DNA of 64,000 nt from the sequence record PQ227241.1. The stretch is one strand, 5' to 3'. Every line of letters starts with the position of its first letter. The stretch's first letter is position 1. This document shows, in pieces, positions 26,583 through 28,867 of this stretch. A program made the position numbers and the translations under genes. Under the pieces are notes generated by a model. The model was given only the letters and a program-made list of their open reading frames with translations, was not told the origin of the DNA and did no database searches.

Positions 26583-26951
26583 TTAATATCCTTCATTAAG
26601 TAGTTCTGCTAGAGCACGTGCCTGTGAAATATCAGTAGAAGCAAAAACATCAGAAAGATAGTTATCATGTTCTTTTGCATTCTGACGCAATTCATCCATT
26701 AGATGTTTATTAGATACCGCCCATACTTTCCACAGATTTTTATAATCATCATATTTGGGATTATACCCGTCTAGTGGTGGTTTTCCTTTACCAGCTTTCC
26801 AATGGTTGGAGTATATGCGATATCCTTTACAATCTAACTGCCAAGCTTCCTCAATTGTTCTGCCATCAGGAAGCCTTGCGTAAAGAGCCGAGAATCTTTT
26901 GTCACCAACAGATGAACATTCATATCCTCCTCGGCGCTTCCACTGATATAT
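26583..26951 (-). CDS. Cryptic 122-aa ORF without ATG/GTG/TTG start (ATA start or -1 frameshift extension of gp82)
   Basis: Hand translation: IYQWKRRGGYECSSVGDKRFSALYARLPDGRTIEEAWQLDCKGY...SQARALAELLNEGY*. It fills the gap exactly. The only in-frame ATG gives 38 aa, so the ORF track misses it. Confidence 0.7.
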   Translation of the reverse strand: MYQWKRRGGYECSSVGDKRFSALYARLPDGRTIEEAWQLDCKGYRIYSNHWKAGKGKPPLDGYNPKYDDYKNLWKVWAVSNKHLMDELRQNAKEHDNYLSDVFASTDISQARALAELLNEGY

Positions 26952-28867
26952 TACTTTGGGTTCTTATAGGTATTAATAAACTTCTCTAGCAGGGTGTCCA
27001 TTTTAGGAGCACCCATGATCTTCTGTGTGATTTCAATAGCATTAACCCTACCACCTGTTAAGTTTACGCCAACTTCACGGCGATGGTGTTCACTAATTCC
27101 TTCCATCATTGAGAATTCCATCACACATGTTTCACGTGCAATATTTAGAATCTGACTAACGTTAGGATATGTCGACACGATGTCAAGGTCGGCGATATGA
27201 CAGAAGATTAAGGTTTTATAATTCGGTAAATCTTTAACACACTGCAATCCATTTGGACCTGCCATGTATGATGGTAGTGTAACAATCCAATCATTATGGC
27301 CAATAACATATTGATCAAGTTCATGCACCATCTGATCTGAACTTGAACCAATGACACATGGCTCTGGTCTATTCAAATACCAGAAGTGCATATCGTCACA
27401 TAGTCGTTTTGGGTTAGAACTAAAGTTCTTATAGTCAGATGCCTTAGAGAATAGACTTATAGAGCGACCAAGGTCATTTACTTGTTCATCAAGTTGTTCT
27501 AGTCGAATGGAGTCGATGATGTTATAAAGACCATATTTGATTTTATGCTTAGTCTGCATCTCACGGTGCCAATCGATACCACCAAGATGTGCAGTTTCTT
27601 TAAAGGTTAACTTACCAAATTCCATTACATATCTAATAGAATCACCATAGGTAAAGTTATCATTTAATATAAAATCATCCACCGGTACCCATTCATTACT
27701 ACCTACATTTTTAATATATTTAGTAATAACGCCGCCTGGTCGGTCAACTAGTTGTTTATTAAAACCTTCAATAAAATCTTCTAAGTCCTTATCATTTTTA
27801 ATGGTCGTGGATTTATCGATGTTTAGTTCTTTTCTAAGAATAGACTCTAACCGATAGTTAGGATCACGTCCTTTAGCTAATCGAGTTACTCGATAAGTTG
27901 ACATAGAATCGATACATTGAAAACTAGAGGGTGCTGTAATCCAATGCCATTGATCCTCCGGTCCTTTAGATTTAGTGACCCCAGATGCAGTGGTGGTCAT
28001 AGGTTCATCAATCTTAAAATGGAAATACCTATAATTCTTAGGTACCGATGGATCAGAAAAAACATCAGCTGGATTAACACCATAGTGTTCTAATGTTTTT
28101 AAGATTCTACCAATGTCGAAGCTAATATTCCAGAATGCGAAGAAATCTGGTTTCCAGGTATGTAGTCGTTTAAAACATTCAATAATAATATCTACTGGTG
28201 TTTCAACAACCATTACTTCAATATCTAGACCACGTTCTTTAATTAGATGTGATAATACCTCTTCTTTTTGTGCTTGTTCTAATGTCTCTTTCACTGGATC
28301 TTCAATATCACTAACCCATCGTTTTAAATAGGCTAAGAAAGCTTTGTTCTTATGTGTAACTGACATACAGATAATCTGACCATCGTTCTCAGCTTCATAA
28401 ACGTTGGTTTCGATGTCACCGCCAGCAACAGTGTTTAGAGAGATTAGACCAGGATAACGTTCTTGATAATCATGCTTCAGATAACAGGTTGAACTAACAT
28501 CACTGCCATATAGGTAAGGACTACGCGCTAGTTGACGAAGAGATCTAGCCGAATAGTCACCTAGGATTTTACTAATCTTACGTTTCATGTCAATTTGAGT
28601 TGACATGTATTTAACTAAGTTACGCTCATATTCGTAATCTTTCTTTTCTTTATGGTTACGCATTCCTTTTGAGGTAATCCAAAAAGGACGCTGGTAGTTT
28701 TCCCACATCCTTAAATTATTTGCAGTTGTACCATCTTCAAAATGAATTCGTTCTTTAACGAAATGCGCATCTGTAAACTTACCAAATTGATCAGTACAAT
28801 AAGTAATATGTTTGGCTTCAATGCCCTTAATCTTTTTCTTATTTGTAACCTGTTGTTCATTAGACAT
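26951..28867 (-). CDS. Family-B DNA polymerase N-terminal subunit: 3'-5' exonuclease plus motif A (gp82 orthologue)
   Basis: ExoI GGDIETN, ExoII WNISFDIG, ExoIII YNIIDS and PolB motif A DLDIVSTYPN. Confidence 0.9.
   Translation of the reverse strand: MSNEQQVTNKKKIKGIEAKHITYCTDQFGKFTDAHFVKERIHFEDGTTANNLRMWENYQRPFWITSKGMRNHKEKKDYEYERNLVKYMSTQIDMKRKISKILGDYSARSLRQLARSPYLYGSDVSSTCYLKHDYQERYPGLISLNTVAGGDIETNVYEAENDGQIICMSVTHKNKAFLAYLKRWVSDIEDPVKETLEQAQKEEVLSHLIKERGLDIEVMVVETPVDIIIECFKRLHTWKPDFFAFWNISFDIGRILKTLEHYGVNPADVFSDPSVPKNYRYFHFKIDEPMTTTASGVTKSKGPEDQWHWITAPSSFQCIDSMSTYRVTRLAKGRDPNYRLESILRKELNIDKSTTIKNDKDLEDFIEGFNKQLVDRPGGVITKYIKNVGSNEWVPVDDFILNDNFTYGDSIRYVMEFGKLTFKETAHLGGIDWHREMQTKHKIKYGLYNIIDSIRLEQLDEQVNDLGRSISLFSKASDYKNFSSNPKRLCDDMHFWYLNRPEPCVIGSSSDQMVHELDQYVIGHNDWIVTLPSYMAGPNGLQCVKDLPNYKTLIFCHIADLDIVSTYPNVSQILNIARETCVMEFSMMEGISEHHRREVGVNLTGGRVNAIEITQKIMGAPKMDTLLEKFINTYKNPK

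What the first reader, a model, noticed from the sequence alone, without database searches (positions are those of the whole stretch)
26583..26962. Hidden ORF behind the DNA polymerase exonuclease subunit: possible -1 frameshift fusion to a NADAR-like domain
Seen: gp82 ends AAC CCA AAG TAA, so a C_CCA_AAG X_XXY_YYZ heptamer with the shift-prone A_AAG sits directly before the stop. The -1 frame stays open for 123 codons and has no ATG/GTG/TTG near its start. A slip would give a ~761-aa fusion. Alternatively ATA in TAATA is a non-canonical or mutated start (normally TAATG). Inference: RFSALY...DG..IEEAWQ..K and W..SNKHLMDEL......LSD follow the motif spacing of NADAR/YbiA proteins (FSNFY...DG..xE.yQA.K; KF.QN..L...L....L.E). 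NADARs remove DarT1-type guanine ADP-ribose from DNA, and T4 gp30.3 is one. An eraser tethered to the proofreading subunit would be a neat counter-defence. The fold call is by eye only.
Basis: partly seen in the sequence, partly recalled or inferred. Interest (0 to 1): 0.8.

Follow-up and report, generated by a model that had tools for sequence, protein, structure and literature searches.

The report
Frameshift-extended phiKZ DNA polymerase subunit
The gene for the N-terminal half of phage phiKZ's DNA polymerase ends in a conserved slippery sequence that very likely lets some ribosomes slip back one base and add a hidden 123-residue domain, giving an unannotated longer form of the polymerase subunit in the best-studied jumbo phage.

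Summary
On the minus strand, gp82 (DNAP-N, 638 aa) ends AAC CCA AAG TAA. The -1 frame opens one codon before C_CCA_AAG, stays open for 123 further codons, and has no ATG/GTG/TTG until codon 89 of 126.

The ORF is a real, selected gene (phrog_9995; more than 850 cluster representatives; dN/dS 0.08-0.34). Comparative evidence strongly favours recoding:
- Of 16 IMG/VR loci where the domain follows DNAP-N, 14 lack a start codon. None of 64 loci elsewhere do (p = 8e-14).
- Most junctions carry C_CCA_AAG or G_GGA_AAG next to the stop, or A_AAA_AAG 8-32 codons before it. These are the three heptamers a review names as highly shift-prone in E. coli. The base before the doublet always matches it.
- Three loci (two lineages) instead have one in-frame TAG, and two metagenomic relatives are plain in-frame fusions.
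- D6 and Psa21 lack a heptamer and have their own GTG/TTG start.

The predicted product is 761 aa (74.0 + 14.4 kDa). No protein evidence was available, and no paper in the searched library describes it.

The NADAR call is only weakly supported: Pfam and hhalign fail, Foldseek gives TM 0.44-0.59 to NADARs, and the domain is fused to SLOG and DUF4326 partners.

The parts
26951..28867 (-). gp82 = DNAP-N, the N-terminal subunit of the split B-family DNA polymerase (N-terminal domain, exonuclease, part of the palm). 638 codons plus a TAA stop; this is the zero frame.
   Evidence: ORF list. phrog_3011 'DNA polymerase', E=1.2e-241. 100% identical to Phikzvirus records. Structure and role described in bioRxiv 10.64898/2026.09.30.755723.
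26954..26960 (-). Slippery heptamer C_CCA_AAG in X_XXY_YYZ register with the gp82 frame; the proposed -1 frameshift site.
   Evidence: Sequence. Invariant in 13 divergent lineages, whereas none of 82 ungapped codon columns in the automatic alignment of the gp82 C-terminal region keeps its third base (Fisher p=1e-5). Replaced by G_GGA_AAG or A_AAA_AAG in other relatives. All three are named as highly shift-prone in E. coli in PMC5009743.
26951..26953 (-). Zero-frame TAA stop of gp82, directly 3' of the heptamer (a 'shifty stop' arrangement).
   Evidence: Sequence. In 12 of the 15 C_CCA_AAG/G_GGA_AAG lineages the stop follows the heptamer immediately; in the 201phi2-1 group (three lineages) it comes one codon later.
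26964..26966 (-). TAA in the -1 frame that closes that frame one codon upstream of the heptamer. Entry into the -1 frame must therefore happen at the heptamer.
   Evidence: Sequence and translation.
26583..26954 (-). -1-frame extension: 123 sense codons (GTA ... TAT) plus a TAA stop, 14.4 kDa. It has no ATG/GTG/TTG before codon 89 of the 126-codon open frame.
   Evidence: Translation. Start-codon scan and mass. phrog_9995 E=1.8e-55 over residues 6-126. 500 homologues. dN/dS 0.08-0.34 among lineages without a start codon.
26586..26951 (-). 122-residue globular domain (phrog_9995 family), alpha+beta and weakly NADAR-like. Invariant residues in the 56-sequence alignment include E34, Q38, D40, K42, W74, W77, D101 and Q110.
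   Evidence: Alignment A1. AlphaFold2 pLDDT 96.7. Foldseek against PDB and BFVD. Profile search found 854 representatives, many inside multidomain proteins.
26949..26951 (-). ATA codon at the position where some relatives have ATG, GTG or TTG and others have ACA, GAA, GTA, GTT or ACT. In phiKZ it is a sense codon (Ile), not a canonical start.
   Evidence: Junction survey.
26583..26699 (-). The 38-aa ORF that GenBank records annotate here (PHIKZ082.1 in phiKZ). It is the C-terminal end of the same -1 frame, called from the first internal ATG.
   Evidence: Annotations. phrog_33573. The region is highly transcribed in RNA-seq tables of PMC12571901.
26486..26510 (-). Intrinsic-terminator-like hairpin with a T run, 73 nt after the extension's stop. 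It closes the gp82 + extension transcription unit and lies between two convergent genes.
   Evidence: Terminator scan; sequence.

Best explanation
Gene 82 of this phiKZ-type phage ends in a programmed -1 ribosomal frameshift site.

Proposed mechanism:
- Most ribosomes read AAC CCA AAG and stop at TAA, making the known 638-aa DNAP-N subunit (74.0 kDa).
- A fraction slip back one base on C_CCA_AAG. The Pro and Lys tRNAs re-pair with CCC and AAA, probably helped by slow decoding of the adjacent stop.
- These ribosomes miss the stop and read 123 more codons, giving a 761-aa isoform of about 88 kDa.
- That isoform carries a 122-residue globular domain of a widespread phage family (phrog_9995) on the C-terminus of DNAP-N, at the palm-insertion end of the subunit.

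What is shown: the site, its register, the open conserved frame, the missing start codon, purifying selection, and conservation and interchangeability of recoding signals in relatives, including plain in-frame fusions.

What is inferred: that slippage occurs in infected cells and how efficient it is.

A further and weaker inference concerns function. Tethering would bring the domain to the replisome and, with DNAP-N, into the phage nucleus. The domain is a small NADAR-like hydrolase acting on a nucleic-acid or ADP-ribose-derived adduct. I put about 0.8 on the recoded fusion and about 0.3-0.4 on a NADAR-type activity.
For: 1. Site and frame: heptamer in register, stop adjacent, and the -1 frame closed one codon upstream and open for 123 codons downstream.

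2. No canonical start before codon 89, yet the ORF is a conserved protein: phrog_9995 E=1.8e-55, 500 homologues, and dN/dS 0.08-0.34 with near-saturated synonymous sites among lineages that also lack a start.

3. Heptamer conservation: C_CCA_AAG occurs in 13 lineages. The preceding codon encodes N, P, S, L, A, D, V or T, yet always ends in C. None of 82 ungapped codon columns in the automatic alignment of the gp82 C-terminal region keeps its third base (p=1e-5).

4. IMG/VR survey: of 16 loci with DNAP-N directly upstream, 14 have no start near the domain. Of 64 other loci, none lacks one: each has a start or is embedded in a long ORF (p=8e-14).

5. Other junction types give the same product. 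G_GGA_AAG sits next to a TAG in one locus (L031). A_AAA_AAG lies 8-32 codons before the polymerase stop, with the -1 frame open from it, in seven loci. A single in-frame TAG separates the two parts in three loci.

6. Natural one-ORF fusions of DNAP-N with the domain exist: P0222/L107 and P0145/L108.

7. D6 and Psa21 lack a heptamer, have the ORF in the +1 frame, and carry their own GTG/TTG.

8. [quoted passage not shown]

9. Function hints:
- AF2 model with pLDDT 96.7.
- NADARs are the only PDB hits with TM above 0.4, and there are several BFVD NADAR hits.
- The domain is fused elsewhere to SLOG, DUF4326, DUF488-N3a, RNase H and an SF1 helicase.
- SLOG and DUF4326 are partners that PMC9503650 describes for NADAR.
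Against: - No protein-level evidence was available: no peptide, no band size and no ribosome footprints.
- No conserved stimulatory RNA structure was found. The phiKZ downstream fold has z=-0.83, and hairpins differ in place and form between lineages. No consistent upstream Shine-Dalgarno-like element was seen.
- Some relatives (PhiPA3, 201phi2-1, Viktualia and three metagenomic contigs) have ATG or GTG exactly where phiKZ has ATA. A free-standing protein is therefore made in at least part of the clade, and ATA could be a weak start.
- The recent cryo-EM work used the 638-aa protein and found a stable, active complex, so the extension is not needed for core activity.
- For function: no Pfam NADAR hit, hhalign probability 0.1-0.2%, and Foldseek probability at most 0.47. 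The invariant Glu and Lys are 8 residues apart, not the 7 seen in NADARs.
Confidence: 0.75

Rival explanations
1. The ORF is a separate gene translated on its own. Initiation would be at the non-canonical ATA (or by termination-reinitiation of ribosomes finishing gp82 at the overlapping TAATA), giving a free 122-aa protein. On this view the heptamer is incidental.
For: phrog_9995 members are mostly free-standing proteins of about 120-130 aa. PhiPA3 and L020 have TAATG at exactly this place. 201phi2-1, Viktualia, L015 and L022 have GTG, D6 has GTG and Psa21 has TTG. ATA differs from ATG by one base.
Against: - Other lineages have ACA, GAA, GTA, GTT or ACT at that codon, which cannot plausibly all initiate.
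- In the A_AAA_AAG lineages the domain frame overlaps the polymerase gene by 8-32 codons. In five of the six lineages the open -1 stretch holds no start codon; Noxifer has one only at its far upstream end.
- This rival does not explain invariance of three synonymous sites of the heptamer, or why the preceding base always matches the doublet.
- No Shine-Dalgarno-like sequence precedes the ATA.
Confidence: 0.12
2. The shift into the -1 frame is made by RNA polymerase (transcriptional slippage adding or dropping a base in the A or C run), not by the ribosome.
For: The A_AAA_AAG lineages have runs of six A. Transcriptional slippage is a known alternative way to make dnaX products in some bacteria (PMC5009743).
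Against: The phiKZ site has only CCC and AAA runs. From general knowledge, that is far shorter than the runs of about 8-9 bases usually needed. The conserved feature is the X_XXA_AAG register relative to the zero frame, which matters to tRNAs and not to RNA polymerase.
Confidence: 0.04
3. The ORF is a dying remnant: a gene that lost its start codon in phiKZ and is no longer expressed. Alternatively, the missing start is a sequencing artefact.
For: Annotators see only fragments.
Against: The sequence is identical in more than 30 independent genome records. The 126-codon frame is intact in a 37% G+C genome. dN/dS is 0.08-0.34 between start-less lineages whose synonymous sites are near saturation. 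The same start-less arrangement occurs in many genera.
Confidence: 0.03

Closest known systems
E. coli dnaX (tau/gamma) programmed -1 frameshift
   Same: A -1 slip on an X_XXA_AAG-type heptamer in a replicase gene gives two isoforms that differ at the C-terminus. A_AAA_AAG, the dnaX site, is the variant used by Noxifer-like relatives.
   Different: In dnaX the slip leads to early termination and the shorter product, and it is driven by an upstream Shine-Dalgarno-like element and a downstream hairpin. Here the slip bypasses the stop and adds a whole extra domain, and no conserved stimulator was found.
Phage lambda G/GT tail-assembly chaperone frameshift (G_GGA_AAG), and other phage C-terminal extension frameshifts such as T7 gene 10A/10B
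   Same: A low-frequency -1 slip near the end of a phage gene yields a C-terminally extended minor isoform. Locus L031 uses the same G_GGA_AAG heptamer (the lambda site is from my own knowledge and PMC5009743).
   Different: Those are structural or assembly genes, whereas here it is the DNA polymerase. Here the added part is an independently folding domain that is a free-standing gene in other phages.
E. coli copA -1 frameshift at a CCCAAAG site (Meydan et al. 2017; from my own knowledge, and PMC9548414 confirms only that copA frameshifting was reported)
   Same: As I recall it, the same heptamer is used for productive -1 frameshifting in a gammaproteobacterium.
   Different: copA frameshifting truncates the protein and relies on a downstream pseudoknot. 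Here it extends the protein, and the stop codon is adjacent.
NADAR ADP-ribosyl glycohydrolases: DarG1, E. coli YbiA, T4 AdfN (gp30.3)
   Same: A small alpha+beta domain. NADARs are the best structural neighbours (TM 0.44-0.59). There is a local 'FSxxxA...DG[KR]' match to the NADAR N-terminal motif. A Glu and a Lys on one helix are invariant. Fusion partners (SLOG, DUF4326) are like those reported for NADAR. T4 AdfN shows that phage NADARs can be anti-DarT factors.
   Different: About 30-40 residues shorter. No Pfam PF08719 hit, and no significant profile-profile match. Glu-Lys spacing is 8, not 7. Activity is untested. No known NADAR is attached to a polymerase.
Stop-codon readthrough extensions (for example the Q-beta A1 protein)
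   Same: Relatives L083/L084 and L100 have the domain in the same frame as DNAP-N behind a single TAG. The same extended product would arise there by readthrough.
   Different: This does not apply to the window itself. Readthrough in those contigs is inferred from the arrangement alone.

Membership tests
Bacterial-type programmed -1 ribosomal frameshift site | X_XXY_YYZ heptamer in register with the upstream (zero) frame, allowing both tRNAs to re-pair in the -1 frame | tested here: met
   C_CCA_AAG at 26960..26954 is in register with gp82. The heptamer is named as highly shift-prone in E. coli in PMC5009743.
Bacterial-type programmed -1 ribosomal frameshift site | The -1 frame is open from the site and encodes a protein under selection | tested here: met
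   123 open codons, phrog_9995 E=1.8e-55, and dN/dS 0.08-0.34.
Bacterial-type programmed -1 ribosomal frameshift site | The slippery sequence is conserved beyond what the zero-frame protein requires | tested here: met
   Three of three synonymous or variable third positions are invariant in 13 lineages, against 0 of 82 ungapped columns in the automatic alignment. X in X_XX always matches the doublet across the C, G and A variants.
Bacterial-type programmed -1 ribosomal frameshift site | A stimulatory element (downstream hairpin or pseudoknot at 5-9 nt, or an upstream Shine-Dalgarno-like sequence) | tested here: inconclusive
   No conserved structure was found. The phiKZ fold has z=-0.83, and a GGAGGA/TCCTCC hairpin 17 nt downstream occurs only in some lineages. 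The adjacent stop codon may serve as the pause instead.
Bacterial-type programmed -1 ribosomal frameshift site | The trans-frame protein is detected | not testable with these tools
   No proteomic or footprint data could be read. No paper in the library reports it.
phrog_9995 (phage protein family of unknown function) | Full-length match to the family profile | tested here: met
   E=1.8e-55, residues 6-126 against profile positions 2-123 of 124.
NADAR (Pfam PF08719, YbiA-like) | Match to the family HMM at or near the gathering score | tested here: not met
   No PF08719 hit for the window protein at E<=1, or for any of 56 family members at E<=10. A PDB sequence-profile search finds no NADAR.
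NADAR (Pfam PF08719, YbiA-like) | Profile-profile homology to bona fide NADARs | tested here: not met
   hhalign against YbiA-type alignments gives probability 0.1-0.2% with only a 6-13 column local match. The NADAR profile was narrow (64% identity or more to YbiA), so sensitivity was limited.
NADAR (Pfam PF08719, YbiA-like) | YbiA-like alpha+beta fold | tested here: inconclusive
   Foldseek gives YbiA (2b3w) TM 0.53 and Phytophthora NADAR (8bau) TM 0.44, while all other PDB hits are at or below 0.21. BFVD NADAR proteins give TM 0.45-0.59. All E-values are above 0.2 and probability is at most 0.47.
NADAR (Pfam PF08719, YbiA-like) | A catalytic Glu and a Lys seven residues later, plus a third Glu, Asp or His in the C-terminal part (PMC11543638, PMC11825919) | tested here: inconclusive
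   Invariant E34 and K42 are 8 residues apart; the variable E35 would give 7. Invariant D101 follows a strand. No residue-level structural superposition was available.
NADAR (Pfam PF08719, YbiA-like) | Hydrolysis of ADP-ribosyl-base linkages | not testable with these tools
   This is a biochemical property; nothing here bears on it directly.

The most novel reading that the evidence does not exclude
A large clade of nucleus-forming jumbo phages uses recoding to set the dose of a replisome-tethered NADAR-like 'eraser'. Recoding would be by -1 frameshifting at three interchangeable heptamers, by TAG readthrough, or fixed as a true fusion. By riding on DNAP-N the domain would be carried into the phage nucleus and to the fork, where it would remove ADP-ribose or a similar base adduct from template DNA. 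This would be a polymerase-coupled counter-defence or repair activity not described for any replicase.
Probability: 0.2. Interest if true: 0.85.

Novelty: new member of a known kind. Interest (0 to 1): 0.72.

Why it matters
phiKZ is the model nucleus-forming jumbo phage, and its split DNA polymerase has only just been reconstituted and solved using the annotated 638-aa DNAP-N (bioRxiv 10.64898/2026.09.30.755723). If the frameshift operates, several things follow:

- The native enzyme population includes a 761-aa isoform with an extra enzyme-like domain. Current annotation, proteomic search databases, interaction screens and structures all omit it.
- It would give chimalliviruses a first documented case of programmed recoding.
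- It would explain why gene callers fragment this locus in dozens of genomes.
- It would link a widespread, uncharacterised phage domain (more than 850 cluster representatives, also present in giant polyvalent proteins) to DNA replication.

The comparative pattern is also a clean natural example of interchangeable recoding signals. Three heptamers, an in-frame stop and true fusions all lead to the same product.

Tried and rejected
- **Sequencing error or start loss in one isolate.** Rejected: the junction is identical in more than 30 records, and the start-less state is widespread.
- **Conserved stimulatory RNA structure.** Sought by folding the phiKZ region and 13 relatives. None is shared and z=-0.83. 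Rfam finds nothing at the junction.
- **NADAR membership by sequence.** All negative or insignificant. I tried Pfam on one and on 56 members and NCBIfam. I also tried a PDB profile search and PADLOC. hhalign, local and global, was run with a broader family alignment against YbiA-type NADARs fetched from E. coli K-12. The global alignment was uninformative.
- **DUF4326 or rhodanese-phosphatase fold as an alternative.** Only short, low-TM (about 0.33) matches.
- **Giant multidomain carriers of the domain.** P0133, P0153 and P0158 have no Pfam domains at all, so they gave no functional context.
- **A T4-type NADAR comparator.** I tried to obtain one through a polymerase search, which returned only chimalliviruses.
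- **Noxifer relatives in GenBank phages.** None found; IMG/VR supplied one (L036).
- **Literature.** No paper in the library mentions a frameshift in gp82, PHIKZ082.1, PhiPA3 gp084 or 201phi2-1 gp143. Supplements of the Grad-seq paper held no entry for gp82 or 82.1.
- **Frame joining.** I built no sequence that joins the two frames and did not fold the fusion.
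Full report
**What the window is.** The region is 100% identical to Pseudomonas phages of the genus Phikzvirus (PA7, SL2 and more than 30 others; phiKZ itself is about 99%). The finding lies on the minus strand. The upstream gene, 26951..28867(-), is phiKZ gp82 (phrog_3011 'DNA polymerase', E=1.2e-241). 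A 2026 preprint shows gp82 to be DNAP-N. [quoted passage not shown]

**Checking the observation.** gp82 ends AAC CCA AAG TAA. CCCAAAG occupies 26960..26954, in X_XXY_YYZ register with the gp82 frame. In the -1 frame a TAA sits at 26966..26964, so that frame opens just one codon before the heptamer. It then stays open for 126 codons, 123 of them after the Lys codon, to the TAA at 26585..26583. The first ATG/GTG/TTG in it is codon 89. That explains why GenBank records annotate only a 38-aa piece (PHIKZ082.1), or that piece plus a spurious 29-aa ORF in another frame. The arithmetic is right: 638 + 123 = 761 aa, or 74.0 + 14.4 kDa. A terminator-like hairpin follows 73 nt after the extension's stop. 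The heptamer alone is not rarer than chance in 64 kb (2 found, 4.3 expected). What matters is its context.

**The hidden ORF is a real gene.** It matches phrog_9995 end to end (E=1.8e-55). It has 500 homologues in the word-indexed protein search and 854 cluster representatives in the full profile search. Among lineages that also lack a start codon, dN/dS is 0.08-0.34, while synonymous sites are near saturation between genera. The region is abundantly transcribed according to RNA-seq tables in the supplements of PMC12571901.

**Junctions in named relatives**. The domain follows DNAP-N in Pseudomonas-infecting chimalliviruses of several genera.

| Phage | End of polymerase gene | Domain frame | Codon at 'start' position |
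|---|---|---|---|
| PhiPA3 | CCC CCA AAG TAA | -1 | ATG |
| 201phi2-1 | TCC CCA AAG TTG TAA | -1 | GTG |
| Viktualia | CTC CCA AAG TAG | -1 | GTG |
| PS119XW | TCC CCA AAG TGA | -1 | ATA |
| HPP-Temi | TCC CCA AAG TAA | -1 | ACA |
| Phabio | GCC CCA AAG TAG | -1 | GTA |

In 201phi2-1 and Viktualia three extra linker codons keep the frame open.

**Junctions in metagenomic contigs.** Six contigs found through their truncated or full gene calls add GAC, GTC, AAC, TCC, ACC and ACC before CCA AAG. Their 'start' codons are ATA, GTG, ATG, GTG, GAA and ACA.

**Conservation of the heptamer.** The codon before CCA therefore encodes eight different amino acids, yet always ends in C. In an automatic alignment of the last 94 polymerase codons of 13 lineages, none of 82 ungapped columns has an invariant third base. 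Aligned from the stop, all three heptamer-bearing codons do (p=1e-5). This is selection on the nucleotide sequence C_CCA_AAG, not on the polymerase protein.

**Wider survey.** A scan of IMG/VR with the family alignment returned 80 loci. Sixteen have a gp82 homologue directly upstream, and 14 of these have no canonical start within reach of the domain's N-terminus. Among the 64 loci elsewhere, every domain either has a start codon or lies inside a long ORF (p=8e-14).

The polymerase-adjacent junctions fall into classes that all give the same product:
- C_CCA_AAG next to the stop.
- G_GGA_AAG followed by TAG (L031).
- A_AAA_AAG in the polymerase frame 8-32 codons before its stop, with the -1 frame open from the heptamer into the domain. 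These are Noxifer (L070), L036, L035, L038, L053 and L071/L073.
- The domain in the same frame as the polymerase behind a single TAG (L083/L084 and L100). L100 has no other in-frame stop in the 1479 nt of polymerase frame held.

The base before the doublet always matches it (C-CC, G-GG, A-AA), as P-site re-pairing requires. [quoted passage not shown]

Two phages fit the rule from the other side. D6 and Psa21 have no heptamer, carry the ORF in the +1 frame overlapping the polymerase end, and have their own GTG or TTG.

**Natural fusions.** Two metagenomic relatives encode the fusion as a plain single ORF:
- P0222 (698 aa; its contig carries a phiKZ-type major capsid gene) aligns to gp82 residues 47-621 and has the domain at residues 561-677.
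- P0145 joins the palm piece of the polymerase to the domain, on a contig where DNAP-N is itself split once more.

**Mechanism.** The most economical reading is a programmed -1 ribosomal frameshift at C_CCA_AAG, likely aided by the adjacent stop (a 'shifty stop'). It would yield a 761-aa DNAP-N isoform alongside the 638-aa form. I found no conserved stimulatory structure. The phiKZ downstream fold is unremarkable (z=-0.83), and hairpins in relatives differ in place and form. The efficiency is unknown. Lineages that keep both a start codon and the heptamer (PhiPA3, 201phi2-1 and others) may make both free and tethered forms.

Rivals:
- Initiation at ATA or termination-reinitiation. This explains neither the ACA, GAA, GTA, GTT or ACT codons nor the heptamer conservation.
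- Transcriptional slippage. The runs are too short, and the conserved feature is codon register.
- A dead gene or a sequencing artefact. This is contradicted by selection and by identity across records.

**What the domain is.**
- The AlphaFold2 model from 56 sequences is confident (pLDDT 96.7) and is alpha+beta.
- Sequence methods do not place it in NADAR. Pfam, NCBIfam, a PDB profile search and PADLOC all give nothing.
- hhalign against YbiA-type NADAR alignments gives probability 0.1-0.2%. These alignments were built from E. coli K-12 ybiA. Only a local 'FSxxxA...DG[KR]' match appears.
- Structure search is suggestive but not significant. In the PDB, the only hits with TM above 0.4 are YbiA (0.53) and the Phytophthora NADAR (0.44), and all others are at or below 0.21. 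In BFVD, several proteins named NADAR or YbiA score TM 0.45-0.55 and one uncharacterised phage protein scores 0.59, with probability at most 0.47.
- The family's invariant E34 and K42 lie on one helix, and D101 follows a strand. NADAR catalysis uses a Glu, a Lys seven residues later, and a third Glu, Asp or His (PMC11543638, PMC11825919). The spacing here is eight.
- Context helps somewhat. Elsewhere the domain is fused to SLOG domains (YAcAr, YpsA), DUF4326, DUF488-N3a, RNase H and an SF1/PIF1-type helicase, and it sits inside giant proteins of 2-6 thousand residues. PMC9503650 describes DUF4326 and SLOG as typical fusion partners of NADAR and Macro domains.

I therefore treat 'NADAR-like hydrolase acting on an ADP-ribose-type adduct on or near nucleic acid' as a reasonable but unproven inference (about 0.3-0.4). 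The anti-DarT idea is one instance of it. T4 AdfN (gp30.3) shows the precedent.

**Novelty and limits.**
- None of my searches of the paper library for frameshifting in phiKZ or chimalliviruses, or for the names and accessions of gp82, PHIKZ082.1, PhiPA3 gp084 and 201phi2-1 gp143, returned a paper describing this recoding or these ORFs as expressed proteins. The two 2026 polymerase preprints do not mention it.
- The mechanism is of a known kind. The case is new, as is the family-wide pattern of interchangeable recoding signals and a DNA polymerase as the carrier.
- Everything here is comparative and predictive; no protein-level datum was accessible.
- I built no sequence joining the two frames and did not model the fusion.

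Noticed in passing
L027:911-1216 (PhiPA3, HQ630627) and L083:732-1107 (IMG/VR contig): Group I introns interrupt the DNAP-N gene at the motif A region (Rfam RF00028: 71.7 bits in PhiPA3; 48.8 bits, just under the gathering score, in L083). This probably explains why the PhiPA3 record has no CDS annotated upstream of gp084. PMC13648698 notes that the Goslar DNAP-N gene is interrupted.
   Followed up: partly
L083/L084 around 1495 and L100 around 1480: In these contigs the domain lies in the same frame as DNAP-N behind a single TAG (GAT TAG CTA; CAT TAG CTG) and has no start codon. These are candidate stop-codon readthrough sites or amber suppression by a phage tRNA. L100 has no other in-frame stop in the 1479 nt of polymerase frame held.
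   Followed up: partly
L108:1550-3711: A relative in which DNAP-N is split once more. Gene 1 (482 aa) ends at TGA, and an ATG three bases later starts a 236-aa protein made of the palm/motif A piece plus the domain as a plain fusion.
   Followed up: partly
P0133, P0153, P0158 and other hits: The same 120-residue domain is embedded in giant proteins of 2000-6000 residues that have no Pfam match at all. They look like polyvalent proteins of phages or mobile elements.
   Followed up: partly
window 26834-26923 (-) and the AGGAGG about 26 nt into the extension: A strong Shine-Dalgarno-like AGGAGG lies inside the extension, where it encodes Arg-Gly-Gly. It is followed by out-of-frame ATGs, which leads some annotations to call a 29-aa ORF here that is almost certainly spurious. 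In PhiPA3-like relatives the same GGAGGA pairs with the TCCTCC (Ser-Ser) codons to form a hairpin 17 nt after the heptamer.
   Followed up: partly
gp82 residues 350-415 (window about 27620-27820, minus strand) compared with L100: The 'little finger' insertion that Basu et al. report only in some Pseudomonas chimalliviruses, and suggest binds a clade-specific partner, appears absent from L100's polymerase by eye. L100 nevertheless carries the appended domain, so the two features are not strictly linked.
   Followed up: no
291 phage records encode a gp82 homologue. In the GenBank phage collection, however, the appended domain was found next to a polymerase gene only in Pseudomonas-infecting chimalliviruses among the records I inspected. 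Erwinia, Vibrio, Salmonella, Serratia, Aeromonas, Klebsiella and Ralstonia phages gave no match to the domain. It is an accessory feature of one clade.
   Followed up: partly
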